A stretch of 32,904 nt of DNA from Salisapilia sapeloensis CBS 127946 (taxonomy: Eukaryota > Protista > Oomycota). Below the pieces are notes generated by a model, which ran no database searches, had not been told where the DNA came from, and was given only the letters and a program-made list of their open reading frames with translations. The number at the start of each line of letters is the position of its first letter. Position 1 is the stretch's first letter. Location of the stretch: assembly GCA_023334545.1 (NCBI GenBank), contig JAADVB010000212.1, positions 1 through 32,904 on the forward strand, read 5' to 3'. A program made the translations under genes and the position numbers. Positions 2,292 to 17,919 of this stretch are shown piece after piece.

Positions 2292-2834
2292 GAATCAGAC
2301 GATTAGTCATCTTTTCTGAGCACGTCATATTGAGCCGGGAACGGATCCTGCCATCTTATCCATTCACATAGATGGTTAGGGTTAAAGATTGAGTTACCAA
2401 ATCGGCGATATCGAATTAAAGGCTACTAGTATCCACGATTAAAGTATCAAAATCTATCAAGGTCTGCCATAAATACTGCTGGAAAGCCCTAAAGGGAACC
2501 AGTCACCGGACCTTTCTGATGCCATGCACCATCTCTTGGTGGCGCTAGTCACGTCCCGGACCGAGTGGCTGTGCTCAGAGTATGTTTAATATGCCGATCG
2601 CAGCGATAATAATCAAATACCCAATCGCACGGCGTGGTGGCACGGTCCGCTGCGCATAAAAGGGATGGTCTGATGAGCCGTCTCACGAAACGCGTGCCTT
2701 CAAGCCTATCAAACCATGCAAGTAGAAACCTCGTTGTAGTACGTTCTAAACGGACCATTAAGTTGCAAAGAGCAGCGCAATGGATCTGCAGAGTGTCGAC
2801 CAGTCAATGCCGGACTCGGGCCGGTCACCTAGGC

Positions 2835-2850
2835 TCCCATTCCGCAATTT
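2835..2850 (+). promoter_or_regulatory. Oomycete INR-FPR core promoter of the oxidase-ZIP gene (likely TSS about 2839)
   Basis: tcccATTCCGCAATTT matches the INR-FPR consensus (GCTCATTYBNNNWTTY) at all positions from the CA onward. It lies about 100 nt upstream of ATG 2940, which supports that start over the upstream in-frame GTG 2634 or ATG 2673. Confidence 0.75.
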
Positions 2851-2939
2851 CCAACTTGCTTCACAAGGCCAACTGCCTGATCTACCCCAGACTACCAGCT
2901 TGGCCAGACAAATCTAAATTTGTCTACTCTTCACCACGC

Positions 2940-5678
2940 ATGATGCACCGAGTCCAAGTCATTGCATTCGTACTCGCGTGTGCGCTGTTGGAAATTGCGC
3001 AAGGTCAAGCGAACCTTAAGACCGATTGGGAAGCCTATGCGTCTCCACTGGTAATCCCGGAAGTCATCGACATGACCAAGGGTGGCCATGTTGACATGCA
3101 GATGGGACGTGCAGAGCACAACTGGACGTCTGACGGAGAGTTCAGTGGCATCACCTACGGTTACGGTCTCCGCAACGGCTCCGCTACCTTCCCTGGCCCG
3201 ACGTTCAAAGTCGCTCGTGGTGTCCCCATTTCCGTCACATGGTATAACGAACTCGGCGCGAAGCATCTTCTCGACGACCGTGTCGACTTGACTCTTACGA
3301 AGGAAGAGTCTGGCTGCTACCCTCGTTGCGGTGTTCCTGCCGTCGTCCACGTCCACGGACTTGAATCTGCTGCCGTGGATGATGGACTTCCCATTTCGTC
3401 GGTCTATGCGAACCAGAGTCAAACGGCTTACTATCGAAACAACCAGTCTGCTTCGACGAAGCTTTACCACGACCATGCGGCTGGTTTGTCTCGAATGAAC
3501 GGATGGGCTGGACTCCTCGGTGTCTACATCGTCGATGATCCCGACACGGAGCAGGAGTACAACGTGGATGTGGACACCGACATCCCACTCATGTTCGCCG
3601 ATCGTTTGGTAACAAACGATGGAGAGCTTCGCTACTCTGAAGACAGCTGCATCGGTCTGGAAAACGATGCGTGGGTTCCTGAATCCTTCGGTGTGGTGAA
3701 CACTGTCAACGGTGTTGTCATGCCGTACGTTGAGGTACCACCAGCGCAGACTCGCTTCCGTGTGATCAACTATGCCAACGCCCGAAACTACAACTTTTCG
3801 ATCCCGTTCGCCGACAAGTGCAAACTGATCGCCAAGGATTCTGGCCTGGTTGCTCACACCGAGCCAATCCCGAGATACCTGAACTTGTTCCCGTTCGAGC
3901 GTATCGAGATGATCTGCGACTTTAACGGTGACAAGGACGGAAAGAAATACGAGGTGACGGACATCCCGACCGTTGAACAGGACCAGCCGTATGATCCGCG
4001 CATTCTCGAAGTTCGCATTTCGGAAGACCTGCTGACTGATGACATGGTCCATCGCGAGATTCCTGACAAGCTTGTCGAGTACAAGAACTTGTCCAAGCTG
4101 TTTAATGAGCTCGGAGGTAAGAACCGAGCGCTGATGTTGGGTGAAAACGAGTACAGCTACCTGTGCCCTGAGCGCTCGATGATTGTCTACAACACGAAGG
4201 AGATCAACACGACGGACATTTGGAACACGCTTGCTTGCACGAAGGGAACGGTCGAGAAGTGGCACTTCAAGAACCCGACGGACGACCCTCACCCCTTCCA
4301 CTGGCATATTGTGAACGCTCAGTGCGGACCGACGGAAGAAGAAATTGACACGAACGGATTTAAGGACGTTGCCGTTATCCCGAATGCGAACGCCACGAAG
4401 GACAACCCGTCGGGTGTGACGCAAGTGTGCTACGTCGCCTGCACGCCACAAGAGTATCTGATTGAAGGCTCGGAGTGGGGTCCTCGGGACTACAGCTTCG
4501 ACACATCTGGTAAGTATGTTGCCCACTGTCACATCATGGAGCACGAGGACAACAGTATGATGGCCTGGTTCCGTATCACTGACCAAGACGACGGTATTCC
4601 TGACGACGATGGAACCGTGGTCGGTGGCTTCATCACTAACACGGTTATCGGTACGGCTATGGGCATGAGTGTATTGGGTGGTCTCGCCATGACGGCGTCT
4701 GTGCTGGTCATCTCCGTCGATCGCCTCAACTTCCTCGCCAGTCCGATCCCGCTTTCCATTGCCTTCGCCCTGTCCGCTGGTGTCATGGTGTTCATTTCGC
4801 TCGCCGATCTCTTTGCCGAAGGCATTGCGTTCTTCACAGCTACTTTCACGGTCGGTGGCAACCCTGACCCGGAGGCCTACGAAAAGGGTGGCTCCGTTGA
4901 CCCTGGTGTGTGTGACACGACGTGTATCGGCAATGCTTGGGCTGCCACCATCGGAAGTCTGTTCGTTGGTGTTGCGATCATTTTGGCCGTCGAGTACATT
5001 GTCCACCAGGTCATTGAGAAGAAGTATGGTGCTGGCCACGACCACGGTAACGATGGGCTTTCACCCGCTCACAGTCCGAACGCCAAGGACGCCCTGCGCT
5101 CTCCGGCGGCCTCGAACGGCTATGAAGACGATAAGGTAAAGGCGAACGACAATGAGACTGGTACCGAGGAGGATGACTCGCTCGTCGGCCAGAATGAGGA
5201 AGTCAAGAACGAATTCAAGCGTGCGGGTATGATGACGGGTGTTGCCATGGCAATCCATAACTTCCCGGAAGGTCTAGCCCTCTTCGTCTCGTCTCTCCAA
5301 GGTCTTCGCACGGGTGTTGTGCTGTCCATCGGTATCATCCTCCACAACCTGCCGGAAGGTCTGGCTGTTGCAGCGCCAGTGTACTACGCGACTGGCAGCA
5401 AGTGGGAGAGCTTCAAGTGGTCAGCCATTGCCGGTGTTGCCAACCCCATCGGTGCTGCTATCGGATGGGCTGCTATCTCCGGCGGTCTCCCGTACTGGCT
5501 TGAAGCATTCTTGTACAGTATGGTCGCTGGTATGCTCATGACGATTACGATTCAGGAGCTGCTGCCTGGTGCGTACAAGTTCGACCCGAGTGGCAAGTAC
5601 TTCCTCCCAGCGTTCTTCACCGGATTTTTAATCATTGCCCTCAGTGTGATGGCTCTGCACTACGCCGGATCTGGTTAG
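2940..5678 (+). CDS. Multicopper oxidase (CotA/bilirubin-oxidase-like) fused to a ZIP (ZupT/GufA-type) metal transporter, 912 aa
   Basis: One uninterrupted ORF. Signal peptide MMHRVQVIAFVLACALLEIAQG. Copper motifs HVH (3348-3356), YHDH (3465-3476), HPFHWH (4290-4307) and HCHIMEHEDNSM (4524-4559). About eight hydrophobic segments follow, with ZIP signatures HNFPEG (5256-5273) and HNLPEG (5343-5360), a His/acidic loop after TM3, and ELLP in TM7. Confidence 0.93.
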   Translation: MMHRVQVIAFVLACALLEIAQGQANLKTDWEAYASPLVIPEVIDMTKGGHVDMQMGRAEHNWTSDGEFSGITYGYGLRNGSATFPGPTFKVARGVPISVTWYNELGAKHLLDDRVDLTLTKEESGCYPRCGVPAVVHVHGLESAAVDDGLPISSVYANQSQTAYYRNNQSASTKLYHDHAAGLSRMNGWAGLLGVYIVDDPDTEQEYNVDVDTDIPLMFADRLVTNDGELRYSEDSCIGLENDAWVPESFGVVNTVNGVVMPYVEVPPAQTRFRVINYANARNYNFSIPFADKCKLIAKDSGLVAHTEPIPRYLNLFPFERIEMICDFNGDKDGKKYEVTDIPTVEQDQPYDPRILEVRISEDLLTDDMVHREIPDKLVEYKNLSKLFNELGGKNRALMLGENEYSYLCPERSMIVYNTKEINTTDIWNTLACTKGTVEKWHFKNPTDDPHPFHWHIVNAQCGPTEEEIDTNGFKDVAVIPNANATKDNPSGVTQVCYVACTPQEYLIEGSEWGPRDYSFDTSGKYVAHCHIMEHEDNSMMAWFRITDQDDGIPDDDGTVVGGFITNTVIGTAMGMSVLGGLAMTASVLVISVDRLNFLASPIPLSIAFALSAGVMVFISLADLFAEGIAFFTATFTVGGNPDPEAYEKGGSVDPGVCDTTCIGNAWAATIGSLFVGVAIILAVEYIVHQVIEKKYGAGHDHGNDGLSPAHSPNAKDALRSPAASNGYEDDKVKANDNETGTEEDDSLVGQNEEVKNEFKRAGMMTGVAMAIHNFPEGLALFVSSLQGLRTGVVLSIGIILHNLPEGLAVAAPVYYATGSKWESFKWSAIAGVANPIGAAIGWAAISGGLPYWLEAFLYSMVAGMLMTITIQELLPGAYKFDPSGKYFLPAFFTGFLIIALSVMALHYAGSG

Positions 5679-5936
5679 ATGTTTCATTAAGGCTTTTAGT
5701 TCTCGCATGTTGTGTATCGCGATCGTGGCTGCATGACAAAAAATAAAATTGATTTTGAGCTTGCAAAGAGTATACGTTCTCATATCCATGTGCTCACTCG
5801 AGATGTATCGGTAGCACTCATGTGTCGAAGCGATCATTCCCAATCGGATCATAGAAATCTTGTTGTTATCAAGTAAAGCGTGTGCATTCATTTTGAAGCC
5901 TTACTACTTGGTAGCTTCGGCAAGGGAAGACTGAAA

Positions 5937-7373
<1,437 letters not shown>

Positions 7374-7425
7374 GGTGAAAGTAGCTAGGAAGGAATCGGT
7401 TTGTTTGGCTTGCGTCCTCGGCGGC

Positions 7426-7441
7426 GAATTCGGAAGTGAGA
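7426..7441 (-). promoter_or_regulatory. INR-FPR core promoter of METAP2
   Basis: The minus strand reads TCTCACTTCCGAATTC, fitting the INR (YCAYTYY) plus FPR (WTTY) spacing. It lies about 60 nt upstream of ATG 7373. Confidence 0.7.
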
Positions 7442-8543
7442 TCTCCAAGACCTCCGCAGTCCATCGAGTCGCCTGGAAGAGGCTCTACCTCTCGTAGCGA
7501 CATCCAACTTCAAGAATTTGTTGGGAGGCATGATTGAGTCATCCTCCCTGTTACTTCTTTTCAGTATGGCAACCCAATATCGGCGATTGCATCATCGGCC
7601 TGAACCCAACTGTCGGAGGAACTGACAAGTCACTTCATCGGCTGGAAACGGATACGTTCAATCTTATCATGCACAGGCCAGCAAATTCTCGTATGCTCGC
7701 GTTTGAAAGAAGAAACACTCATGAAAATAGAAAAAAAGTTGATCGTTTCCACTCTCTTTGACAGACCCTGGTGCATAGTGTTGAACTTCTGTATCAATGT
7801 TTCTGAAGCTCCTTTCACGTTTGACTAACCAGGCAGCACGTTTATTGGCTTTCGATGTACCACGTTGCATAATGAGCTACAGGTGCGATCTCCATTGTGA
7901 TTCCTGTGCGACCAAGTCACGGCTTTCGTGTGTATATCAAAGGCACCAGCACCATACCTCGCCTCATACAGCTATTGATCCAATGGAAATCTAGCCGATT
8001 GACAGCGTTTACGTGGCCTCGCTCGCTCTACTCGTTCGTAGCATTGATTGCACCTCTTTTGCATATATCTTCGACAAGGACAATGCTCATGAAGCTGTTT
8101 GATCAATAAGAATTTATTATTTTGCGAAGACATACTTCATTTCGCGTCGTGCTAAGCTTTCGTAGTCTGCACAAGTGGCCTTTTCTGTATGTTATGTTGG
8201 TACCAGAAGCGACCCATCGGCTACCTCTATTCGCGCGACAACATCTTACCACGAAGAAATACAGGCTCTTCGCTACCATATATATAATCATAGAGATGAT
8301 CACTCTGCGACCAATCACCTCAACCAAGTGTAGGACGTAAAAGTAGTGTTTGTTTGCCCCAATACTGGACTATCCAGTGTATATTAAATGAGCAGAGTTG
8401 TACCTTGACATCCTATACAACTCCTAGAACCGTTGCAAAGCACTTTGCGAATTGTATCGGCCATTGTGAACCGCTCAGGACCGTATCTCCAACTTACCGC
8501 TGGACAGTCCAATGTAGACCTACTTTACATGCCATCTTTTACA

Positions 8544-11500
8544 CTAAGTCGTGTCTTCCGGTTGTGCTTGCTTTCGTATCGGAGGCAATGTAGTGGATTT
8601 CTTGCGTGACTCAGCTAAGCGACGATAGAGTGACGAGTTCCTGTATGCGTTCTTTTTTATGTGGGCTTTTTTGTTCATATCTTGCTCTGAGTCGGTATGC
8701 TCAGCGTTACCTTCCACCTGTTGCTGATTGTTGCTTCCAACCATCGCTTCATCTTTGCTAGCTTCCAGATCTTTCGAGTCGTGGGGAGTACAATACACGT
8801 CGACTCGACGTCTTTGAAATTGTGCCATATCGTCTGATGTGAAGTGAGGACAATGCGTCACGTCCAGCGTTGACAACAGTTTCAATCTATCGTAGATAGC
8901 TTGAAAGCTTTGACTCGTGAGTTTCTTGCATGAAGACAAATTCAACGACTGAAGCGCTTCCGCTTGTGCTACGATACTAAGCAGCCCTTTGTCTGAGATT
9001 TTGATGCACCGCGCCAAATTGAGTTCTTCTAGCCACAAATGTTTCGCGATGGATTCCAACGCAACGTCCGTCAAGTTCCGACAAAAGCTGATATCTAGAC
9101 GGATGAGTTTAGAGCAAGTTTGGACAATATCTGCCACGTTTTCGTCTGTAAGGTAGCTACAGCCTGCCAACTTGACAGTGGTAACGTCGGTGCATTTCAT
9201 CACGACCGCCTTGATGCCGTCTGCGGACAACTGCAAACAGAAGCTCAGGTCAACAGCTTCCAAACTTATGTCTGTTGGTTTCCCACTAAGGTTGTCACAA
9301 AAGAGCCAGCGAAGTCCCTGGTCAGTCACACCGGAGCAGCGTGATATGTTGATTGACTTTAACCGACGGGCGCGATGGCCAACATGTCCGAGCAATACGT
9401 CATCAATGGATGCACCACCGGCAACGCTCAGCTCAATGATGTTTGTCAGCATCTTTCGATCAACGATATCCCGCCCATCGTTCACTTGATCGAACATAAA
9501 GCTCGTCGACGAAATTGACATGACATCTTCCGCTAACAGAGTATTAATCTTGACGCAGTTATGTGTGATGCGCTTGAGCGACTTGTCTGTCAGTTTCTCA
9601 CATTTATTGACATTAAGATGCCGTAGTTCAGGGCAATGTAGAGCTACATTTAACAAGGCAATGTCATCTAGACGTTGACATCCACTGAAATTGAGCTTTA
9701 GAAGTGTGGATGGATCCTGCATCTTCTTCAGCATTCCTTCGACACCAGTACTTCGAATCTGCACACACATCTCAACATCGAGCGTATGCAGCTTACGCAC
9801 GTACTTTGCAAGGAACAAGAGAGTATAGTCGGTGACATGTGAACAGTAAGAAAGACCAAGTTCTCGTAGCTTGGCATTGGATCGAGCTAGTGCCTCGATA
9901 CCAGTGTCTGTTAGGTTATAGCAGTGCGCTAGCCACACCCGTTGCAATTTTGTACAGACACGACCGATATATTGAAAAGCAGTGTCTCCTAGCTGATCGC
10001 AGTAAGAGAGCTCAAGCTCTTCGACATGAGACAATGATTGAAAAGCACGTCCAATCCCTTCATCAGACAATAATCGGCAGTTATTTGCTTTTAAAGACGT
10101 GCAAAACGTATTGTTGCGAGCGATTATCTCAAAATCATGGTCATTGATGTCCAATACATGTTTCAAGTCGATGCATCGAGGGTCTTCACCGCTTTCACTC
10201 GCAAGGATGAAGTAAGCGATGGCTTTTTGGTTTTGCAAGCTTCGAACCCACGAAAGATTCGTCAGCTCATCTCCATAATATGTAGGAAACACTTCTAGGA
10301 CTCTGCATACCACATCTGTAAATACATGTAGCATACTTTCTTCCGTACTCTCGATGTCATCTTTATCGTCACACTTAAGACAACCAAGTGAATAGGCTGT
10401 TTGAGAACCAAAGAAAAAATCAAGCGGCATGCGTGCGAGGTCTGGTAGACTAAGGCGACATTGATCACTTTCCGTGGCTTGAAAGTACTGTGAGTCCATT
10501 TCAAGTACACTACGATAGCAGTGGATAAACAAGTCACTAAAAGCGATGTCTCGAGGTAGACTCTTTAATATCTCAGCAATGCCATGCACGTTTTCACTCG
10601 TAAGAAGAGGTACGAGACCACATCGAACTTTTTTCTTGTACATGTTTTGCGCATACTGCTGATCCAAGTCGTACTTGAGGGATGCACAAATGTTATCTGC
10701 AAACTTGCGTAGCATAAGCTTATCGTCCGGAGCAAACGAAAGTGCTTGCTGGAAACGACTTGCTGAAAGACTAAAGAAGTAGTCAGACTCATTTGCTCGA
10801 TCGCGCGTGCCCATGACAAAGTGAGAGTTGATCTCGTCGTGACTGAGCGTGTGCCCATTGTAATACGCAACATGCGCAATGCAGCCATGAAAGAAGCGCT
10901 TACCATCTTTCCGTCGTGCTGACGATAAGCATCCTATTCTGAGCGGTCGATTGCCCTGTGTAGCTTGTTCTGCCAAATCATTTTCGATTTCCAAATTCAC
11001 TCGGTTCCTCATTTCCTCGTATTCTTTCACGACAACCTTTAGACGTTCCTCATACTCGGATCGAATTGACTGTTTTTTTGCCAGTGGCTCAAAATCTAGA
11101 TAAGATACTTTCGACAAGTCTTTCATCGTTTTTGCCTTTTGTTTGGTCTGTAGACGCGAATCCTCCGCTGCACTGGCAACACTTCCTTGGGAAAGCCGCG
11201 ATCGAAATTTGTGTTCTTCGCACAATTTTTGACTCATCGCTTTTATATTTTTCTTGCCTTCCTTTGTCACAAAGTAAGTTTGCATTTCACTTTCGACATC
11301 TTTAAAGCAAAGCGCCTTGGCATCATCCTCTAGCTGGTTAATATCGTCACGCTTCTTTTGGATCATAGCCTCTCTCTTGGCAAGTGCTTGGTCTACAACA
11401 GCATCCACTTCCAATTCATGGCAAAGATATCCATCGGCATAGAACCGCATGATCGTACCATCGAACGTTCCCACAAGGTACACCCACTTCCCAAAGACGA

Positions 11501-14500
11501 CTCGTGGTCCTTTTGCCGACAAGTCAATGTCTTTAAAACTACCGCTAAATGCCCATCGATTGCTTTTGAGAGCGCTAAGTGAATACCGACCAACGGTCAC
11601 AGCAACTCGGCGTGTGCTTTCATGACCGTCACATTTACACCATGCTTCAACAGAAACCTTTGCATCTGGTGATGTCGGGTAAAAGCGATCAATGTATTTA
11701 AATCGCACGTAGCTTCGGTTCTTCTTATCTAACTGAACAGCACGATTGAATGCCACATTGCATACAGGACCATCCGCTTCTAGCCTGCATCCAGGTAAAA
11801 AGTCTCCGATCCAATCCTTACTGTATGTACCCATATTCGCGGCAATTAGAGTTCCTCGCCGCTCACACAGTGTCCAGTAACCGGAGGGTTTATGAGAAAC
11901 AATGAGATCAGAATAAGAAGTCGCTTGCTTCACAACTGCTTGTAGCAGTAGAAGAGATGCCATGGAAAAGTGAAGCATCGAAAGATTGTGCTTAATGTGG
12001 CAGTAGTCACCATCGAGTAGGTCATCGGCTATAAACGTATAGCTGTCTGGTAAGAGGCTGAGTCTTTCCAAGCATTTGGATTGTAGCTTTATTCCAGTCA
12101 TCGATACAAGTCGGTCTATCATATACCGCATCTTAGGTACTAAAGTGCGTCGGAGACTCGGTTTCTCTACTTCGGATATCGATCTAACACCGAAACGCTG
12201 ACGGATACCAACATACATGTGCGTCGTCCAAAACCATTCACTAATGTCTCCACTTCCACAAAGCAAGTTTAGACAGTAGACAATGAGTTTTGCATGCAGA
12301 CCTGCTGTAAATCCTGCTCCGACCATCTTTGATGTGCTGCGTAGAAAGTGGCGAAGTATGTTCTTAAACGTCCGTACAGCTATCTCGGCAAGAATGAGCA
12401 GTCGAATGTCGGCTGCATGCTGCTGGCATTCAAGCCACCCGCTATAAATGTCAACATTTTGTTCCGAGTGATCTGGATGAACTCGATCTAAAGTTATACA
12501 CGTTGCATCAAATCGGTGGCGTCTACTCATACTGACTTTAAACTGCTTTCCATGGATGATGATCGGTCCACCTCGCTCTACTTCTCTCGTGAAATCATCC
12601 GTGGATGCAACTTCAGCTGTGCCATACTGAAGTGTGACTGTGCCTGTGAGTTGGAACACAAACTTGGATCGTAATAAACCAAGGTGTCGCACGTTAATAC
12701 CGTGTCGATGGAGCTCTGTTGTCAAGTAGAAGGCTTCAGAGGTAAAGTATCGCTCTTTCTGTGATAACTTGACGGCAAAATTGTGAAGGACATCACCTAG
12801 CAAATATTTCGTAGCTTTTTCCACACCTGATGCTTGCTCTTGCCAATCCGGTGTGCAATACGTCATATACGATAGTGCATCTGATGATAGTGGCTCTTCG
12901 TTCATTGCGACAAACTCCGGTCGTAGCTGTCTCCATAAAATAGACAGTCCTCTTGTCGATTGTGGTAGGTGGATGGTAAGACTCGGGTCTTCCGGTGGCA
13001 TCGCTCGAGCGAACTGAAGTAGTGCAAAACCTTTCTCTGTCGTTGCGTATCCCAACATGTCTGCAGGTCCATGGAAAACCTTGGATGTTAAATCCTGGTA
13101 ACCGCGTGCGCTGTGACGTTTTAGGTTTAGACGACCTGCAGCATCTTCTAGTATCTTGGACATCTCTTTACTCTGAGAGATCATCGTTTTACCTCTGCTA
13201 TCACTCCCGCAAAGCAACTGCTTGGTGCGTTTCTGTATTGCCGTACCAGCTTCATTCCAAGTGATGGTCTCGATCGGAAGCTTAGCCACACATAGCAGTC
13301 GGAAACCTGCATAGTCAACGGTACATTGGAGTGGGAGCAAAAGGTTTTGAACGTGGCTTAAGTGCCTGAAATATAATGCCGAGTTTCGGATCTCATGAGA
13401 CGCATACTTGGCCGCGTACTCGTCTGAATTTTCAAACCGGCCATGATCGTCGGTGCAAAATTGAAATCGAATGTTATGGCATTCATATGTATGTCGATAA
13501 GTCGATCGAACGTCATCCTTCCGTCCATCGACTTCAGAAGTGGTAGTTGGCAAGATAGATTTATCTCGAAGAGGTAGCGGGTACTCTCGAATGAGTATCA
13601 TGCCAATAGCACGCGCTGTCTCAACAAAATCATGACAGACATTCGACAGCTCCGTGTATTTCTGAGAAGCTTCTTCTGCGGTACTATCAGGTGTGCGCAA
13701 AGCGTTGTAAAAGCGCTCCGTCCATTTGACTCGATCTGCCGAGAGTATAGGATATTTAGATTGCTCTTTGAGCTGCTGCTTTTGAGTGTGCAGTAACGCA
13801 ATTTCGGCTTCCTTCCAAGCTTTCATCGCTTCCATAAGTTGTTTGTGAGTATCATCTACTTTCTTTCTCTTTTCATTAAGTTCAAAAAGATTTGCATGCT
13901 CTAGAGCAGCCATTGAATCCACTTCTTCTGTTTGCTTCTCTTCGCTTTCAATGTGTGCTGCCGCTAACACGTCTTTCTTGTATCCCATGCGAATGAGTTT
14001 CTTTTCAATCATAGTGGCATTCGCTTTCGTCTGTTCTGATGCTTGGAAAGTGACTAGATTTTGTAGTATAGAATCATTTATTTCAAGCACTCGATGCATA
14101 AGCTCTTCCGCCACTCCAAACTCCATGTCGGTAGTAAAAATACGAACAAAACCTTGTGCAAGATCCTCTGCACCACGAATAATACGGAAGTGATCGAACA
14201 AGTCTGTTTCCAATCGGTTCATGTCAAATGTCCCATCCGACTTGCGGAAAGCTTGTACATAAGTGCAAAGGTGCCGCTTTGATGGTAGCTCTTGAAGCAT
14301 CTCTTGCAGTTTTAAATCTGTCAACCCACGACACATACTCTGTAATCGGTTTTTAAAGTCAACTAAAGCAGTGTCTGTACATCCTAGACGTAACTCTGTT
14401 CCCACTTCGTCTCTTGTTAGCCCTTTACCATATGCGATGGCATCAAAGCGTCCTCTGACCATGTCATCCTGTCTCTGACGACTAGCTTCAAGTCGAATTT

Positions 14501-17500
14501 CCCGTTCCTCTTCATCGACAAAATGTAAAGAAGTTTCACGCGCAACCTTGTCATCCTCTTCCACTTCTTCCCAATGCTCTTTTGTGTCCTTGGTTTCATT
14601 TATCGCAATCATCTCTTTCATGATAGATATATCTGCTGTGGCTTCTTTGGCTTTTACGACATTATCAACAAGTTCTTTAGAAACAGTGCCTTCTAAATAG
14701 ACGAGATCGGCATGCGGTTTCTCTACCAAATCCTTATGCGTCACATAGCCGAGCGATTCCTCCATCTCTCGAAACCTATTTTCCACTTCCTTTTGCGCTT
14801 GCTGGACTGCTTCCTCCCGCATTAACGCCATGACTTCGTCTCGGCTGAACGTATTTCCCTTTGTACGTAGCTTGACCTGACGCATCCGAATCTTTGCTTC
14901 AAACCTCATCTTTTCCACCGAGTGACCGGGTTTTTCATCCTTCTCTTGCCACTCTGCCTCGATAGTGTCTCTCGCTTCTTGCAACTCTACGCCTCGAGCA
15001 TGGTAAAATGCTTGCTTTTCAGCTGCAAAACGAGCCATTTGACGCCCTCGTTTGGCTCGCCAACCTGTTTGGAGTTTGATAGCAGCACGTAGCATCATAT
15101 CCATGCGGAAGTTAATGAGATTTCTGTAGCCACCATGATCTAACGGAACGACTTTGGATAGCAAGTTGGAATGACGTTTGGGTAAGTACTTGGAATAATC
15201 TGTTTTTAGCGGGTCATTTTCACCCATGGCAAGTGCTCTTGTGTGTATGACCTCTTTCCTATACATGGAAAGCTGTTGGCGGCAATGAGCAGATTCGTAT
15301 GCGATAGCATACTGGAGATCGCTCATGTTGATTAAACCGAGTCGATAGCGATGTACCGCACTCATATGTTGGATCACGAACCGACTCAGTTGGTCATACT
15401 GCCACACGTGATGGAAGATGTCACACAAATATTTCGATTGCTCCACCGTTCCAATACAATAGCGTTCAAATTCTAAACTAGTCATACCATCGATTCGTTG
15501 TCCACTTGCATGCGCCTTCAGTTCACCAGTAGGTACACCTAGCTTTAGGAATTCACGATCAGCTAAACGTAGTAGAAACTCACGCGTGAGTCCGCGAGGC
15601 AAGTGAAGATCTTGTATACGAATGATCAAGTCCACTGCTAATCGCAATATTTCTGCAAATGCGTTTCGCGATAGAACTTGAATTGTAGTTTTACGATTGC
15701 AAAAGAGGCGAAAGACGAATTGAGTTCTTTCATGAAGGCTGTTGGCGGCGCTGCCTATGATTAATGCTATTGCGAGCTCCAACAAGGTACATCGGATTTG
15801 ACCTTCACCATTCTTAGACTTGGTTAAACAACTATAAAGCGGAAGAAATATCTGTTCTTGGTGGTAGATCGCTTCGCCTCTTTTAAGTAAAAACAGTTCT
15901 TCATCGTACATTTTGCAGATCGATTCCAATTCCTTTTCTTTCGACGTGATTTGGTCTTGCGCGAATAAAAGTTGAGACCGGTTTTTCGCGTCAGACCCTC
16001 CAATCACTTTGCTTTTGGCGTTTTGAAGAGCTACGAACTCTTCCTTTGCTATTCGAAGCGCCTGTTTTGCCTCTTCCATGTCGTGCTGTAGCTTGGACAT
16101 CTCGCTTTCGTGAAACTCGAGCCGATGACGGCCGATTGGTTCATCCACACGCCGAACACGCTTAATTTGGCCTAGTAGTTCATCACACTCCCGTTGTGCT
16201 GTTGAGATCTTTTCCTCGACTTTTTTCGTTTGCTGTTCCAACTCTTCGTCTTCTCGATCCCATTGCTCCTGCAATCGTTTGCTTTGAGCTTGAAACGTAC
16301 GAAAGAATGTGTCGTTCGGGTCAAGCTCCTTCTTTGCTCGATCGAATTCATTCTGACGTTGCTGACGCTGCTTCTGCCTTTTAGCTTCAACATCTTCTTT
16401 TCGCTCCTTTAAAATTTGTCCTTTACTCCTTTCGCTCCCGATGTTCGTCTCCATACGTTCATAATAATATTTAACTTTCTTATCAAACAGCTCATCTTCC
16501 TGTGCCTGTACTGCATCTTGAGCTTGTATCACGGTCTCCATCTCATTAGAAGCTTTCTTTAATGTGTAGCCAAAGAAGATAGGACTTCGGATCGTTGGAT
16601 CGATCGATTCAGGTAATTTTCGTTTAATCACGCGAGGCTGCTTTAATGATAAAAGATAAGGAGTTAATTCGTTTGCTTCTGCCTGTATTTCGTTTGAGGC
16701 CGACTGTGGATCAGGTATCGAACTCTCATCTATCAAACCTTCCTCTGTCTCTTTCTCCTCTGCGTCATCTGTCGCTGCTGGCTTTGTAGCAGGTATAATG
16801 TCGTCGTCTTCCTCACTCTCTTCATCAGAATCAACGATTCTCTTCTTTTGTCTGGAAGTCTGGGGATTGTTCTCTACATCTACATCTTCCTTTTCCTCTT
16901 CGTCTTCACTATCGTGTTCACTTTCATCTACGCTTGCAGCAGAGCTACTGGCACTATCGTCCGTAAAACCATCAATCTCGTGACGCTCTGGAGGTGGTAG
17001 CACAGTGTCTCCTGTACTGTATTCGTTGAACAGAGTTACTGCAGCTGGGTCCTTGTCCATTGCATATCCAGATGCTGAAGGATGCCAGCTCTTTGTCGCT
17101 GCAGCATGTGACTCCAAGTCTTCCTGCATATGAACCTGTGTTGCTGCTTTAATATAAGGAGCCCAGCAAACGATACGATGTAGATCGACACCATCAAAAG
17201 AAGCTAGTAGATGGCTTTCCATCTCCTGTACTAGTAGCTGGTGTTGTCGTAATGAAGTAGTAACTGCTTCTTTACGCTGCATGAGTTCCGTTCGAGAGAC
17301 TAGAGTCAAACGTTCATCCTCATTACCCCCCATGTGGGTGTCCAATTGTTGTAACTCGGACTCTACATGATCTAAAATGTCTATTTCTTGCTGAACAGTG
17401 AGATGCAATACATCAACCTGATCTTTGACACTTGACAAGTCGATTCGAGTCGCGAGTTCCGAAGAATTGTGGGCATCAAACTGCATATACCATCTCAACA

Positions 17501-17678
17501 TAGATGTGATCCGATCCGTACTCCAATTGAAGCAAAAAGAAAAGATCTGCTGCCGCTGCGCTACATCATTTTCCGATCGTTTCGTTTGTTCCGTACGAGG
17601 CGAATCGTAGTTGGAAATGACACCATTCATTTCTTCCTTTGTATCCTCTTCCAGAAACTTAGATATTTCACCACCCAT
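8544..17678 (-). CDS. Giant (about 3044 aa) multidomain protein: coiled coils, EF-hand-like region, IQ motif, CLU domain, LamG/ConA-like domain, C-terminal leucine-rich repeats
   Basis: Single 9.1-kb ORF; the first ATG at 17678 gives MGGEISK. IQ-like AAIKLQTGWRAKRGR (about 15040-15090). CLU-like TVDYAGFRLLCVAKLPI...LLCGSDSRGKT...FARAMPPE...LWRQLRPEFV (about 12900-13640) and LTTELHRHGINVRHLG. LamG-like SVEAWCK...WVYLVGTFDGTIMRFYADG...LRIG...FHGCIAHVAYY. Many LxxLxLSxCxxLTD repeats of the FBXL/AMN1 type (about 8820-10180). Confidence 0.88.
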   Translation of the reverse strand: MGGEISKFLEEDTKEEMNGVISNYDSPRTEQTKRSENDVAQRQQIFSFCFNWSTDRITSMLRWYMQFDAHNSSELATRIDLSSVKDQVDVLHLTVQQEIDILDHVESELQQLDTHMGGNEDERLTLVSRTELMQRKEAVTTSLRQHQLLVQEMESHLLASFDGVDLHRIVCWAPYIKAATQVHMQEDLESHAAATKSWHPSASGYAMDKDPAAVTLFNEYSTGDTVLPPPERHEIDGFTDDSASSSAASVDESEHDSEDEEEKEDVDVENNPQTSRQKKRIVDSDEESEEDDDIIPATKPAATDDAEEKETEEGLIDESSIPDPQSASNEIQAEANELTPYLLSLKQPRVIKRKLPESIDPTIRSPIFFGYTLKKASNEMETVIQAQDAVQAQEDELFDKKVKYYYERMETNIGSERSKGQILKERKEDVEAKRQKQRQQRQNEFDRAKKELDPNDTFFRTFQAQSKRLQEQWDREDEELEQQTKKVEEKISTAQRECDELLGQIKRVRRVDEPIGRHRLEFHESEMSKLQHDMEEAKQALRIAKEEFVALQNAKSKVIGGSDAKNRSQLLFAQDQITSKEKELESICKMYDEELFLLKRGEAIYHQEQIFLPLYSCLTKSKNGEGQIRCTLLELAIALIIGSAANSLHERTQFVFRLFCNRKTTIQVLSRNAFAEILRLAVDLIIRIQDLHLPRGLTREFLLRLADREFLKLGVPTGELKAHASGQRIDGMTSLEFERYCIGTVEQSKYLCDIFHHVWQYDQLSRFVIQHMSAVHRYRLGLINMSDLQYAIAYESAHCRQQLSMYRKEVIHTRALAMGENDPLKTDYSKYLPKRHSNLLSKVVPLDHGGYRNLINFRMDMMLRAAIKLQTGWRAKRGRQMARFAAEKQAFYHARGVELQEARDTIEAEWQEKDEKPGHSVEKMRFEAKIRMRQVKLRTKGNTFSRDEVMALMREEAVQQAQKEVENRFREMEESLGYVTHKDLVEKPHADLVYLEGTVSKELVDNVVKAKEATADISIMKEMIAINETKDTKEHWEEVEEDDKVARETSLHFVDEEEREIRLEASRQRQDDMVRGRFDAIAYGKGLTRDEVGTELRLGCTDTALVDFKNRLQSMCRGLTDLKLQEMLQELPSKRHLCTYVQAFRKSDGTFDMNRLETDLFDHFRIIRGAEDLAQGFVRIFTTDMEFGVAEELMHRVLEINDSILQNLVTFQASEQTKANATMIEKKLIRMGYKKDVLAAAHIESEEKQTEEVDSMAALEHANLFELNEKRKKVDDTHKQLMEAMKAWKEAEIALLHTQKQQLKEQSKYPILSADRVKWTERFYNALRTPDSTAEEASQKYTELSNVCHDFVETARAIGMILIREYPLPLRDKSILPTTTSEVDGRKDDVRSTYRHTYECHNIRFQFCTDDHGRFENSDEYAAKYASHEIRNSALYFRHLSHVQNLLLPLQCTVDYAGFRLLCVAKLPIETITWNEAGTAIQKRTKQLLCGSDSRGKTMISQSKEMSKILEDAAGRLNLKRHSARGYQDLTSKVFHGPADMLGYATTEKGFALLQFARAMPPEDPSLTIHLPQSTRGLSILWRQLRPEFVAMNEEPLSSDALSYMTYCTPDWQEQASGVEKATKYLLGDVLHNFAVKLSQKERYFTSEAFYLTTELHRHGINVRHLGLLRSKFVFQLTGTVTLQYGTAEVASTDDFTREVERGGPIIIHGKQFKVSMSRRHRFDATCITLDRVHPDHSEQNVDIYSGWLECQQHAADIRLLILAEIAVRTFKNILRHFLRSTSKMVGAGFTAGLHAKLIVYCLNLLCGSGDISEWFWTTHMYVGIRQRFGVRSISEVEKPSLRRTLVPKMRYMIDRLVSMTGIKLQSKCLERLSLLPDSYTFIADDLLDGDYCHIKHNLSMLHFSMASLLLLQAVVKQATSYSDLIVSHKPSGYWTLCERRGTLIAANMGTYSKDWIGDFLPGCRLEADGPVCNVAFNRAVQLDKKNRSYVRFKYIDRFYPTSPDAKVSVEAWCKCDGHESTRRVAVTVGRYSLSALKSNRWAFSGSFKDIDLSAKGPRVVFGKWVYLVGTFDGTIMRFYADGYLCHELEVDAVVDQALAKREAMIQKKRDDINQLEDDAKALCFKDVESEMQTYFVTKEGKKNIKAMSQKLCEEHKFRSRLSQGSVASAAEDSRLQTKQKAKTMKDLSKVSYLDFEPLAKKQSIRSEYEERLKVVVKEYEEMRNRVNLEIENDLAEQATQGNRPLRIGCLSSARRKDGKRFFHGCIAHVAYYNGHTLSHDEINSHFVMGTRDRANESDYFFSLSASRFQQALSFAPDDKLMLRKFADNICASLKYDLDQQYAQNMYKKKVRCGLVPLLTSENVHGIAEILKSLPRDIAFSDLFIHCYRSVLEMDSQYFQATESDQCRLSLPDLARMPLDFFFGSQTAYSLGCLKCDDKDDIESTEESMLHVFTDVVCRVLEVFPTYYGDELTNLSWVRSLQNQKAIAYFILASESGEDPRCIDLKHVLDINDHDFEIIARNNTFCTSLKANNCRLLSDEGIGRAFQSLSHVEELELSYCDQLGDTAFQYIGRVCTKLQRVWLAHCYNLTDTGIEALARSNAKLRELGLSYCSHVTDYTLLFLAKYVRKLHTLDVEMCVQIRSTGVEGMLKKMQDPSTLLKLNFSGCQRLDDIALLNVALHCPELRHLNVNKCEKLTDKSLKRITHNCVKINTLLAEDVMSISSTSFMFDQVNDGRDIVDRKMLTNIIELSVAGGASIDDVLLGHVGHRARRLKSINISRCSGVTDQGLRWLFCDNLSGKPTDISLEAVDLSFCLQLSADGIKAVVMKCTDVTTVKLAGCSYLTDENVADIVQTCSKLIRLDISFCRNLTDVALESIAKHLWLEELNLARCIKISDKGLLSIVAQAEALQSLNLSSCKKLTSQSFQAIYDRLKLLSTLDVTHCPHFTSDDMAQFQRRRVDVYCTPHDSKDLEASKDEAMVGSNNQQQVEGNAEHTDSEQDMNKKAHIKKNAYRNSSLYRRLAESRKKSTTLPPIRKQAQPEDTT

Positions 17679-17919
17679 CTCACCTGGTCTAATAGCAATT
17701 ATATAGCTACCAAGGTGCAAAGAATGAATCAAATAGATCGGTAAAAAGGCTTGTATAAGAGAAAATGGGCGTCTCCTCGCTCCATCATTAAGTTTGTTTC
17801 AGACGTTGTTGAAGAGACGCCTAGCAATCTTTTCATCCAATCATATAGACATAAACGACAAAACGATGATGCAGGTTGGATAAAATGTCTCTCTTTTCTT
17901 CAACATCCAACAGAGAAGT

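What the first reader, a model, noticed from the sequence alone, without database searches (positions are those of the whole stretch)
2940..5678. Single-chain multicopper oxidase-ZIP transporter: a possible one-polypeptide redox-coupled metal transport system
Seen: one ORF with no stop or frameshift joins a signal peptide, a complete multicopper oxidase (all T1/T2/T3 His/Cys/Met ligand motifs, about eight N-glycosylation sequons), a short acidic linker (DQDDGIPDDDG) and a complete 8-TM ZIP. Established: ZIP N-termini face the extracytosolic side, so the oxidase would sit at the transporter entrance, where LIV-1 ZIPs such as ZIP4 carry their extracellular domain. The known oxidase-permease partnerships (Fet3-Ftr1, hephaestin/ceruloplasmin-ferroportin) use separate proteins and non-ZIP permeases. 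ZIPs carry divalent ions while multicopper oxidases oxidise their substrates, so this cannot simply copy Fet3-Ftr1. Inferred options: oxidation of Cu(I) to Cu(II) feeding uptake; trapping of Fe(II) or Mn(II) moved outward or into the secretory lumen; or the ZIP supplying metal for the oxidase. I do not know of a functional description, but it may already exist as an automated annotation.
Basis: partly seen in the sequence, partly recalled or inferred. Interest (0 to 1): 0.87.

Follow-up and report, generated by a model that had tools for sequence, protein, structure and literature searches.

The report
Oomycete copper oxidase fused to ZIP transporter
This is a real, transcribed gene, kept in all major groups of water moulds, that joins an iron-oxidase-like copper enzyme on the outside of a membrane to a ZIP metal transporter in one protein chain; no function has been described for it, and it most likely handles iron.

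Summary
Window 2940-5678(+) is one uninterrupted 912-aa ORF: signal peptide, three-domain multicopper oxidase (MCO) with every Cu ligand, an acidic tether, and an 8-TM ZIP. RNA-derived contigs cover only this gene, bridge the tether and show no splice or break.

It is not a one-off. About 70 full-length relatives carry the same architecture in Pythium, Globisporangium, Phytophthora, Lagenidium, Albugo, Aphanomyces, Saprolegnia, Achlya and Thraustotheca. Trees of both halves are congruent, indicating one ancient fusion. Among 1.84 billion cluster representatives, only this family matches both halves.

New here:
- The oxidase belongs to the CotA/LPR1 clade, not Fet3. It carries, invariantly, the two carboxylates (E248, D449) essential for Fe(II) oxidation in Arabidopsis LPR1.
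- The fused ZIPs keep both HNxPEG motifs.
- They have fusion-specific features: an extracytosolic ExxE loop, a conserved DD..DDG tether, and Gln/Asn in place of the TM6 Glu of the second metal site.

Best reading (about 0.4): a single-chain ferroxidase-permease for iron, analogous to Fet3-Ftr1 but with a ZIP. Transport direction and transported species are untested. Databases hold only automatic names, and I found no functional paper. Verdict: new variant of a known kind, interest 0.66.

The parts
2781..2939 (+). 5' UTR (transcript 5' ends at about 2781-2855). An out-of-frame ATG at 2807 lies only in the longest contig.
   Evidence: Contig ends; ATG scan.
2940..3005 (+). Signal peptide, aa 1-22 (MMHR / hydrophobic core / AQG|Q).
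   Evidence: Sequence and hydropathy. The N-terminus is variable but hydrophobic in all relatives.
3006..4580 (+). Extracytosolic three-domain multicopper oxidase of the CotA/LPR1 clade, aa 23-547, with 8 N-glycosylation sequons and 9 invariant non-ligand Cys.
3348..3356 (+). Cu motif 1, HVH (H137, H139).
   Evidence: H137 in 69 of 69 and H139 in 68 of 69 (one gap).
3468..3476 (+). Cu motif 2, HDH (H177, H179).
   Evidence: Invariant.
3672..3692 (+). WVPESFG, with E248 at the position of LPR1 E269 (Fe(II)-binding carboxylate 1). CotA has Ala here.
   Evidence: E in 69 of 69. Motif from PMC9168544. CotA alignment.
3960..4019 (+). Variable acidic loop before the beta-strand ILEVRI (D341 and Y351 invariant, D352 in at least 90%). 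This is the possible counterpart of the dispensable LPR1 D370 loop; the literal motif 2 is absent.
4272..4307 (+). NPTDDPHPFHWH: D449 at the position of LPR1 D462 (carboxylate 3), followed by T1 His451 and the T3 His residues. CotA has Gly at the D449 position.
   Evidence: D in 66 and E in 2 of 69.
4524..4559 (+). HCHIMEHEDNSM: T1 Cys530, His535, axial Met540, and T3 His529/His531.
   Evidence: Invariant.
4581..4637 (+). Conserved acidic tether DQDDGIPDDDG plus a short spacer, aa 548-566. It has 6 acidic residues, 0 basic residues and no dibasic site.
   Evidence: D550 invariant; D551, D556 and G558 in at least 90%; family pattern DD[DG]xx[DN]DDG.
4638..5663 (+). 8-TM ZIP permease of the GufA/ZupT/ZIP11 type, aa 567-908.
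4848..4922 (+). Extracytosolic TM2-TM3 loop. It carries the fusion-specific D-P-E-A-Y-E-K-G (ExxE, E645/E648) and C658-x3-C662.
   Evidence: D.E..E.G occurs in 58 of 59 fusions and 0 of 65 stand-alone ZIPs. CxxxC occurs in 59 of 59 fusions and 7 of 65 stand-alone ZIPs.
5031..5183 (+). Variable cytosolic TM3-TM4 loop containing His (GHDHG), aa 698-748.
   Evidence: Mean identity 19%; low pLDDT.
5256..5273 (+). TM4 HNFPEG (H773, N774, E777), aligned to BbZIP H177/N178/E181.
   Evidence: Invariant; BbZIP alignment.
5343..5360 (+). TM5 HNLPEG (H802, N803, E806), aligned to BbZIP Q207/D208/E211.
   Evidence: Invariant.
5439..5453 (+). TM6 A-N-P-I-G: N835 replaces the Glu aligned to BbZIP E240 (second metal site).
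   Evidence: Among fusions: Q in 50, N in 1 (this window), L in 2, 6 unscored. Among stand-alone ZIPs: E in 48 of 48 scorable.
5676..5678 (+). Stop codon (TAG).
5679..5862 (+). 3' UTR.
   Evidence: Contig ends at 5764-5862.

Best explanation
The gene encodes a membrane protein of an oomycete-wide family that arose from one ancient gene fusion. After the signal peptide is removed, a copper-loaded, glycosylated, disulfide-bonded multicopper oxidase of the CotA/LPR1 clade sits on the extracytosolic face. A short, conserved, strongly acidic segment tethers it to TM1 of an 8-TM ZIP permease.

I propose that it works as a single-chain iron oxidase-permease:
1. Fe(II) binds at the carboxylates E248 and D449 next to the type-1 copper and is oxidised, while O2 is reduced to water at the trinuclear cluster.
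2. The acidic tether and the fusion-specific ExxE loop at the mouth of the ZIP pass the metal between the oxidase and the permease.
3. The ZIP, with intact HNxPEG motifs in TM4 and TM5, moves it across the membrane, most likely into the cytosol.

This would give iron-selective, high-affinity uptake in the manner of Fet3-Ftr1, but with a different oxidase lineage and a different permease family.

Shown here: architecture, topology logic, transcription, conservation, single origin, catalytic and transport residues.
Inferred: Fe(II) as substrate (about 0.6), functional coupling to transport (about 0.45), uptake as the direction (about 0.3-0.4).
For: - One ORF and one transcript.
- Every Cu ligand, E248, D449 and both HNxPEG motifs are invariant or nearly so in 68 full-length relatives spanning Saprolegniales, Albuginales and Peronosporales. 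Both halves are therefore under selection for activity.
- 24 of the 36 listed coding differences from a 96%-identical relative fall on third codon positions.
- E248 and D449 sit in the LPR1 motifs whose mutation abolishes ferroxidase activity (PMC9168544). CotA, a laccase, has Ala and Gly at these positions.
- LPR1 homologues and CotA are the best structural matches in Swiss-Prot.
- Trees of the two halves are congruent, and the fused ZIPs form one clade with support 100.
- Fusion-specific changes lie at the outer mouth and in the metal site of the ZIP: the ExxE loop in 58/59 against 0/65, and TM6 Glu changed to Gln/Asn. This argues for co-adaptation of the two halves.
- The family is retained in the obligate biotroph Albugo.
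- Twelve invariant Cys and 8 sequons fit a secretory or extracytosolic location.
Against: - ZIPs are known to carry divalent cations (established knowledge), whereas the product of a ferroxidase is Fe(III).
- The transport site is essentially that of stand-alone ZupT-like ZIPs and has lost a carboxylate rather than gained one. That does not suit a trivalent ion.
- LPR1 motif 2 is absent, and motif 1 deviates at one position (Ser for Tyr/Ala/Phe).
- MCO-only paralogues keep the same E/D pair, so these residues are not specific to the fusion.
- No iron-related neighbours occur in this window or in three other oomycetes.
- There are no activity, localisation or regulation data.
- The model is of moderate quality (pLDDT 72, pTM 0.62, low confidence around the Cu sites) and gave no usable inter-domain geometry.
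Confidence: 0.4

Rival explanations
1. Efflux or lumenal trapping. The ZIP lets Fe(II) (or Mn(II)) leave the cytosol to the outside, a vacuole or the secretory lumen. The tethered oxidase converts it at the exit to Fe(III), which makes the flux irreversible and deposits iron in the wall or lumen. This resembles ferroportin with hephaestin/ceruloplasmin, or Drosophila ZIP13 feeding secretory ferritin.
For: - The ZIP site stays a divalent-type site, so Fe(II) is a natural substrate.
- The oxidase then acts on the permease's product, which fits the chemistry better than Fe(III) import.
- A ZIP that exports iron from the cytosol is described for Drosophila (Zip99C/ZIP13, as cited in PMC12218971).
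- The acidic tether and ExxE loop could equally guide metal from the exit to the oxidase.
Against: - Nearly all characterised ZIPs move metal into the cytosol (established knowledge).
- Retention in a reduced obligate biotroph (Albugo) and several paralogues per genome fit nutrient acquisition better than detoxification.
- There are no localisation data.
Confidence: 0.2
2. Copper route. The oxidase acts as a cuprous oxidase, turning Cu(I) into Cu(II), and the ZIP imports Cu(II). The oxidase product would then be a divalent ion that a ZIP can carry.
For: - This is the only scheme in which the oxidase product matches ZIP charge selectivity.
- Ferroxidase-type carboxylate sites such as that of Fet3 also oxidise Cu(I) (established knowledge).
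- His/Asn/Glu ligands suit Cu(II).
Against: - There is no Met-rich CueO-type insert: at most 3 Met in any 45-aa window.
- Environmental copper is already Cu(II) under oxic conditions, and eukaryotes normally reduce it for Ctr uptake (established knowledge).
- E248 and D449 match a proven Fe(II) site.
Confidence: 0.12
3. A Zn/Mn importer with an attached guard. The ZIP imports Zn(II) or Mn(II), and the oxidase merely removes redox-active Fe(II) or Cu(I) nearby, or senses them and gates the ZIP, without handing metal over.
For: - The ZIP half is closest to ZupT/ZIP11-type zinc transporters.
- Oomycetes often live in waterlogged, Fe(II)-rich habitats (general knowledge).
- In LIV-1 ZIPs, an extracellular domain at the same position modulates transport (established knowledge for ZIP4).
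Against: - A single tethered enzyme cannot deplete a freely diffusing ion at the pore mouth unless access is sterically channelled (physical argument, inference).
- Strict 1:1 covalent coupling kept since the Saprolegnian/Peronosporalean split is easier to explain by hand-off of an intermediate.
Confidence: 0.12
4. Anchor only. The ZIP half serves just to hold a wall-modifying laccase or phenol oxidase at the membrane.
For: - The oxidase is CotA-like.
- Some paralogues have swapped the ZIP for a Ser/Thr-rich tail or lost it, so the oxidase can work without a ZIP.
Against: - The transport-site residues H773, N774, E777, H802, N803 and E806 are invariant in 69 sequences, and the TM core is as conserved as the oxidase.
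- An anchor would need one helix, not eight.
Confidence: 0.05
5. Artefact: two adjacent genes read through, or a mis-assembly.
For: None found.
Against: - No stop, frameshift or intron; RNA contigs bridge the junction in four runs from two organisms.
- About 70 independent assemblies show the same fusion.
Confidence: 0.01

Closest known systems
Fet3p-Ftr1p (yeast) and FOX1-FTR1 (Chlamydomonas) oxidase-permease iron uptake
   Same: An extracytosolic multicopper ferroxidase is physically coupled to a polytopic permease. Acidic residues next to the T1 copper bind Fe(II). ExxE-type and acidic motifs are proposed to relay iron.
   Different: Those systems use two separate proteins. Their oxidase is of the Fet3/laccase lineage with its own C-terminal TM helix. 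Their permease is Ftr1 (OFeT family), with RExxE in TM helices, not a ZIP. Here there is one chain, a CotA/LPR1-lineage oxidase, and ExxE in a loop.
Arabidopsis LPR1 / LPR2 and bacterial LPR1-type ferroxidases
   Same: Same MCO clade: top Foldseek hits and 'LPR1-like' automatic names. The two essential carboxylates are conserved in equivalent motifs (WxPE..G and NPTxDxHP).
   Different: LPR1 is a soluble cell-wall/ER protein with no transporter. Motif 2 with D370 is not recognisable here. Sequence identity is only 22-25%.
Bacillus subtilis CotA laccase / bilirubin oxidases
   Same: Best sequence match among solved structures (E 1e-47 over aa 81-549). All four Cu motifs and the axial Met are shared.
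   Different: CotA has Ala and Gly where this protein has E248 and D449. It oxidises bulky phenolics and is not membrane-bound.
ZupT (E. coli), BbZIP, mammalian ZIP11 (GufA subfamily of ZIPs)
   Same: 8 TM helices, with HNxPEG in TM4 and TM5. Aligns to BbZIP TM4-TM7 and to the ZupT model (165 bits).
   Different: The score is below the ZupT equivalog cutoff (252). The TM6 Glu of the second metal site is replaced by Asn/Gln. The loop carries an added ExxE, and there is a ~550-aa N-terminal ectodomain.
Ferroportin with hephaestin/ceruloplasmin; Drosophila ZIP13 with secretory ferritin
   Same: A divalent-iron carrier is paired with a ferroxidase on the trans side.
   Different: Those are separate proteins that act in export. 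Ferroportin is not a ZIP, and the ferritin ferroxidase is not an MCO.
LIV-1 ZIPs with large extracellular domains (ZIP4, ZIP14 etc.)
   Same: A large N-terminal extracytosolic domain precedes TM1 of a ZIP.
   Different: Their ectodomains are non-enzymatic helical/PAL domains. Here it is a complete redox enzyme on a GufA-type ZIP.

Membership tests
Three-domain multicopper oxidase (CotA / bilirubin oxidase / LPR1 clade) | Four copper-binding motifs: HxH, HxH, HxxHxH, HCHxxxHxxxxM. | tested here: met
   HVH137-139, HDH177-179, HPFHWH451-456, HCHIMEHEDNSM529-540. Invariant across 68 relatives apart from single gaps.
Three-domain multicopper oxidase (CotA / bilirubin oxidase / LPR1 clade) | Three-cupredoxin fold with full-length similarity to clade members. 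| tested here: met
   CotA aligned 52-511 of 513, E 1e-47. Foldseek TM by hit is 0.70-0.78 to LPR1 homologues and CotA. Pfam detects domains 1 and 3 only.
LPR1-type ferroxidase (Naumann et al. 2022) | Motif 1, [WVI]xP[EA][YAF]x[GA], with Glu (E269). | tested here: inconclusive
   WVPESFG has the Glu, invariant in 69 of 69, but Ser at position 5 is outside the published pattern. Some clade members (WVPEAFG, WAPEAYG) match literally.
LPR1-type ferroxidase (Naumann et al. 2022) | Motif 2, N[DTS][AG]xxP[YF]PxG[DE]x(5-10)[VI][ML]xF (D370; reported as dispensable for high affinity). | tested here: not met
   No literal match. There is only a conserved acidic loop (D341, Y351-D352) before ILEVRI. The bacterial outgroups P0120, P0121 and P0126 do carry NDAxxPFP.
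LPR1-type ferroxidase (Naumann et al. 2022) | Motif 3, NxTx[DEG]xHP, with Asp (D462) two residues before the T1 His. | tested here: met
   NPTDDPHP 445-452. D449 is D in 66 and E in 2 of 69.
LPR1-type ferroxidase (Naumann et al. 2022) | Measured Fe(II) oxidase activity. | not testable with these tools
   Needs an enzyme assay.
Fet3-type ferroxidase | Membership of the Fet3/fungal laccase lineage with a C-terminal single TM anchor. | tested here: not met
   No Fet3 appears among the 60 listed PDB sequence hits or the top 30 Swiss-Prot structural hits. The nearest are CotA, LPR1, bilirubin oxidase and CueO.
ZIP (SLC39) family, GufA/ZupT subfamily | Pfam Zip domain over eight TM helices. | tested here: met
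   PF02535 at 106 bits (cutoff 35.1), profile 14-321 of 323. Eight helices in the model.
ZIP (SLC39) family, GufA/ZupT subfamily | TM4 and TM5 metal-binding motifs (HNxPEG twice). | tested here: met
   HNFPEG 773-778 and HNLPEG 802-807, invariant, aligned to BbZIP H177/N178/E181 and Q207/D208/E211.
ZIP (SLC39) family, GufA/ZupT subfamily | TM6 Glu of the second metal site (BbZIP E240; 'AEPxG'). | tested here: not met
   N835 here. Among fusions, Q in 50 and L in 2. E in 48 of 48 scorable stand-alone relatives.
ZIP (SLC39) family, GufA/ZupT subfamily | ZupT equivalog (NCBIfam NF003243 cutoff). | tested here: not met
   165 bits against a cutoff of 252; only profile positions 111-265 matched.
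Oxidase-dependent iron permease system (Fet3-Ftr1 type) | Permease of the Ftr1/OFeT family with RExxE in TM1 and TM4. | tested here: not met
   The permease half is a ZIP. The ExxE lies in the TM2-TM3 loop, not in a helix core.
Oxidase-dependent iron permease system (Fet3-Ftr1 type) | Obligate physical association of oxidase and permease. | tested here: met
   Covalent fusion, transcribed as one mRNA and conserved in about 70 orthologues and paralogues.
Oxidase-dependent iron permease system (Fet3-Ftr1 type) | Oxidase-dependent iron transport. | not testable with these tools
   Needs uptake assays with oxidase-dead mutants.

The most novel reading that the evidence does not exclude
The fused ZIP is a true oxidase-dependent iron permease: iron oxidised by the tethered LPR1-type ferroxidase is handed through the acidic tether and ExxE loop into the ZIP. 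By 'Rosetta-stone' logic, this would mean ZIP transporters can be the long-sought permease partners of multicopper ferroxidases in lineages that lack Ftr1. The partner of Drosophila Mco4, for example, is explicitly unknown (PMC12218971), and Paracoccidioides has ZIPs but no Ftr1 (PMC4585334). It would also mean oomycetes, including major crop and fish pathogens, use a lineage-specific iron-uptake machine.
Probability: 0.25. Interest if true: 0.85.

Novelty: new variant of a known kind. Interest (0 to 1): 0.66.

Why it matters
Oxidase-permease coupling is a textbook principle of eukaryotic iron uptake, but it is known only for separate proteins with Ftr1-type permeases. A covalent, anciently conserved fusion of a ferroxidase-like MCO to a ZIP would matter in four ways:
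1. It is strong genomic evidence that an MCO and a ZIP can work as a unit.
2. It poses a sharp chemical question: how can a divalent-cation carrier cooperate with an enzyme that makes Fe(III)? A single construct can address this.
3. It suggests where to look for the missing permease partners of ferroxidases in animals and fungi that lack Ftr1.
4. It defines an oomycete-restricted surface protein family, absent from plants and animals as a fusion, in organisms whose metal nutrition is poorly understood.

If it turns out to be a zinc importer with a decorative oxidase, the interest drops. The fusion-specific changes at the ZIP mouth would still need explaining.

Tried and rejected
- **Fusions outside oomycetes.** An exhaustive phmmer search of 1.84 billion representatives found only the family's own cluster (P0007) matching both halves. 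Pfam scans showed the long or multi-stretch hits to be bacterial MCOs with secretion or adhesin tails, or tandem ZIPs. The ESM Atlas returned only MCO-only clusters. A very divergent fusion scoring below about 139 bits could still have been missed.
- **Genomic context.** This window holds MetAP2, a CLU-LamG-LRR giant, a peptidase-jacalin protein, Nup107, a His phosphatase and a trypsin-like protease. The loci in P. cinnamomi, Saprolegnia parasitica and Pythium oligandrum also have no metal-related neighbours. The conserved downstream unknown protein is ARM-repeat-like and 63% identical between the first and last of these. Context gives no clue.
- **Literature.** Nine full-text searches and six papers read gave no description of the fusion. 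Subscription-only papers and database notes such as TCDB or InterPro could not be checked.
The model tool returns no coordinates, and pTM is only 0.62, so this was not measured.
- **CueO-like Met-rich insert.** Absent.
- **Kex2-type dibasic cleavage site in the tether.** Absent. This is weak evidence against processing.
- **Loop-length argument (short CotA loop against long LPR1 loop).** Dropped, because the HMMER alignment to CotA shows similar loop lengths.
- **Whether oomycetes also have Ftr1/Fet3.** Not testable here, because no tool-supplied Ftr1 query was available.
- **CxxxC pair as a fusion-specific feature.** Rejected: 7 stand-alone ZIP relatives share it.

Full report
**Observation**

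The window holds one long ORF at 2634..5678 on the + strand. Its first in-frame ATG downstream of the mapped transcript starts is at 2940, which gives a 912-aa protein.

- Pfam finds Cu-oxidase_3 (aa 134-201), Cu-oxidase_2 (428-549) and Zip (582-901, nearly the whole profile).
- Residues 81-549 align end to end with Bacillus subtilis CotA (E 1e-47).
- The ZIP half aligns with the ZupT model and with TM4-TM7 of the solved Bordetella ZIP.
- All copper ligands are present: HVH137-139, HDH177-179, HPFHWH451-456, HCHIMEHEDNSM529-540.
- Eight N-x-S/T sequons lie in the oxidase half.
- An AlphaFold2 model built on 59 family members (pLDDT 71.7, pTM 0.62) has a beta-rich N-terminal half and eight long helices between 567 and 908.

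**Transcription**

In three runs from the same organism, contigs match with 0 mismatches and cover about 2781-5764. Depth is zero over the upstream intergenic stretch (2381-2742) and about 3 over the neighbouring MetAP2 gene, against 60-140 on this gene. That pattern is what RNA gives, not DNA.

A 958-nt unitig (4403-5360) bridges the linker (nt 4581-4637). In a ~96%-identical relative, one 3008-nt contig runs from 2855 to 5862; its only indel is at 5738, behind the stop codon. No joints (introns) and no internal transcript ends were reported. Of the 36 listed coding differences from that relative, 24 are at third codon positions. The run type is marked 'RNA?' by the tool, so this rests on the coverage pattern.

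**Distribution**

The word-indexed search returned about 76 proteins of roughly 820-940 aa with the same three Pfam domains:
- Peronosporales and relatives: Pythium, Globisporangium, Phytophthora (several paralogues per genome, some in tandem), Nothophytophthora and Lagenidium.
- Albuginales: Albugo.
- Saprolegniales: Aphanomyces, Saprolegnia, Achlya and Thraustotheca.

They are 47-62% identical to the window protein. Their names are automatic ('ZIP family', 'Spore coat protein A', 'Multicopper oxidase LPR1-like', 'FtsP/CotA-like multicopper oxidase.../zinc transporter ZupT').

In an exhaustive search of 1.84 billion cluster representatives, only one representative, the family itself, matched both halves. 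Every other top hit was oxidase-only or ZIP-only. The long or multi-stretch hits proved to be bacterial oxidases with secretion tails or tandem ZIPs. The ESM Atlas gave only oxidase clusters. As far as these searches reach, the architecture is restricted to oomycetes.

**Origin**

- A maximum-likelihood tree of the oxidase half puts all fusions and the oomycete oxidase-only paralogues in one clade (98/99). That clade splits into a Saprolegnian and a Peronosporalean branch.
- Oxidase-only forms are either sister to the fusions of one branch or nested inside them. P0082-84 sit within Phytophthora fusions and carry a Ser/Thr-rich tail in place of the ZIP. P0087 stops right after the linker motif.
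- The ZIP halves of the fusions form a single clade (support 100, FastTree) with the same internal split. They are separate from stand-alone ZIPs, including one from the oomycete Lagenidium.

Together with the shared tether and loop motifs, this indicates one fusion before the Saprolegnian/Peronosporalean divergence, followed by duplications and occasional loss of the ZIP.

**What the oxidase is**

The nearest solved and reviewed relatives are CotA, plant LPR1/LPR2 and homologues, bilirubin oxidase and CueO. Fet3 is not among them.

Naumann et al. (PMC9168544) showed that Arabidopsis LPR1 is a high-affinity ferroxidase. Its activity depends on E269 and D462, with D370 partly dispensable. These residues sit in motifs [WVI]xP[EA][YAF]x[GA], N..P[YF]PxG[DE]..., and NxTx[DEG]xHP. 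CotA lacks these carboxylates.

- The window protein has WVPESFG (E248) and NPTDDPHP (D449), where CotA has Ala and Gly.
- E248 is invariant, and D449 is Asp or Glu in 68 of 69 sequences.
- Motif 2 is not recognisable. Only a conserved acidic loop (D341, Y351, D352) remains.
- There is no CueO-like Met-rich insert.

I therefore rate Fe(II) as the most likely substrate (about 0.6). Membership of the LPR1 type is only partly met.

**What the ZIP is**

Both HNxPEG motifs (TM4 H773/N774/E777; TM5 H802/N803/E806) are invariant. They align with the metal-site residues of BbZIP. The TM core is as conserved as the oxidase: 59-66% mean identity against 58%. This argues against a mere anchor.

Three features set the fused ZIPs apart from 65 stand-alone relatives:
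1. The extracytosolic TM2-TM3 loop carries D-x-E-x-x-E-x-G in 58 of 59 fusions and 0 of 65 stand-alone ZIPs.
2. The TM6 Glu that aligns with BbZIP E240 (second metal site) is Gln in 50 fusions, Asn in the window protein and Leu in 2, but Glu in all 48 scorable stand-alone ZIPs.
3. The tether before TM1 keeps a DD[DG]xx[DN]DDG pattern, with no basic residue and no dibasic processing site.

A CxxxC pair in the same loop is shared with some stand-alone ZIPs, so it is not fusion-specific.

**Topology**

By established knowledge, ZIP N-termini and the TM2-TM3 loop face the extracytosolic side. A signal peptide, eight sequons and twelve invariant Cys (ten in the oxidase half, counting the T1 ligand Cys530, and two in that loop) fit this orientation. 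The oxidase, the acidic tether and the ExxE loop are thus all on the same side, at the outer mouth of the transporter.

**Mechanism**

Covalent 1:1 coupling, kept since the Saprolegnian/Peronosporalean split and accompanied by fusion-specific changes at the ZIP mouth and metal site, is best explained by hand-off of a metal between the two halves. This is the logic of Fet3-Ftr1, where insoluble Fe(III) must be channelled.

My preferred reading is a single-chain ferroxidase-permease for iron uptake. Its weak point is chemistry. ZIPs carry divalent ions, and the site here has lost a carboxylate rather than gained one.

- The main rival reverses the order: Fe(II) leaves through the ZIP and is oxidised at the exit. 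This resembles ferroportin-hephaestin, or Drosophila ZIP13, which moves iron out of the cytosol.
- Cu(I)-to-Cu(II) uptake is the only scheme in which the oxidase product is a ZIP-type ion. It lacks any specific support.
- A 'guard' that depletes Fe(II) at the pore is physically weak unless access is channelled.
- Genomic context gives no help.

**Comparison and novelty**

The system works like an oxidase-permease pair but is not a member of the Fet3-Ftr1 system: the oxidase lineage is different, the permease family is different, and it is one chain. Nine full-text searches found no paper describing it. It exists in databases under automatic names. I class it as a new variant of a known kind.

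Two first-reader notes on this same window agree with what I found independently: the oxidase is CotA-like rather than Fet3-like, and Asn stands at the TM6 Glu position.

By Rosetta-stone reasoning, the fusion suggests ZIPs as candidate partners of ferroxidases where Ftr1 is missing. The partner of Drosophila Mco4 is unknown, and Paracoccidioides has ZIPs but no Ftr1.

Noticed in passing
window 3773-3824, 4392-4432, 5331-5470: Short unitigs of two- to four-fold higher depth interrupt the gene's contigs in runs X1-X3, and the last carries two differences. They probably hold k-mers shared with a second expressed paralogue or allele of the MCO-ZIP gene in the same organism.
   Followed up: no
window 5937-7448 (-): A methionine aminopeptidase 2 gene is split into two ORFs (5937-6728 with Peptidase_M24; 6822-7448 with a poly-Lys N-terminal block). 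The ~93-nt gap is probably one intron. It is expressed far more weakly than the MCO-ZIP gene.
   Followed up: partly
window 8544-17732 (-): An intronless 3062-aa ORF combines CLU, eIF3_p135-like, Laminin_G_3 and LRR domains.
   Followed up: partly
window 17920-20817 (+): A 965-aa protein has a PF12044 putative metallopeptidase domain followed by two jacalin-like lectin domains.
   Followed up: no
window 2807: An out-of-frame upstream ATG lies inside the longest 5' contig (which starts at 2781) but upstream of the other three contig starts (2846-2855). It may be a uORF on a minor longer transcript.
   Followed up: no
P0082, P0083, P0084 (Phytophthora and a JGI metagenome): These oxidase-only paralogues are nested inside the Phytophthora fusions. 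They have replaced the ZIP with a 250-390-aa Ser/Thr/Gly/Asn-rich, mucin-like tail, which suggests a wall-attached version of the same oxidase.
   Followed up: partly
P0110 (Lagenidium giganteum, 625 aa): Two complete ZupT-like ZIP domains lie in tandem on one predicted protein. This is either a gene-model merger or a genuine double ZIP.
   Followed up: no
L001 19112-20320 and L003 13972-15258: A conserved ~400-aa ARM-repeat-like protein of unknown function (63% identical) lies downstream of the MCO-ZIP gene in both P. cinnamomi and Pythium oligandrum. It is followed by DHHC and bVLRF1 genes. This is a different locus from the one in the window.
   Followed up: partly
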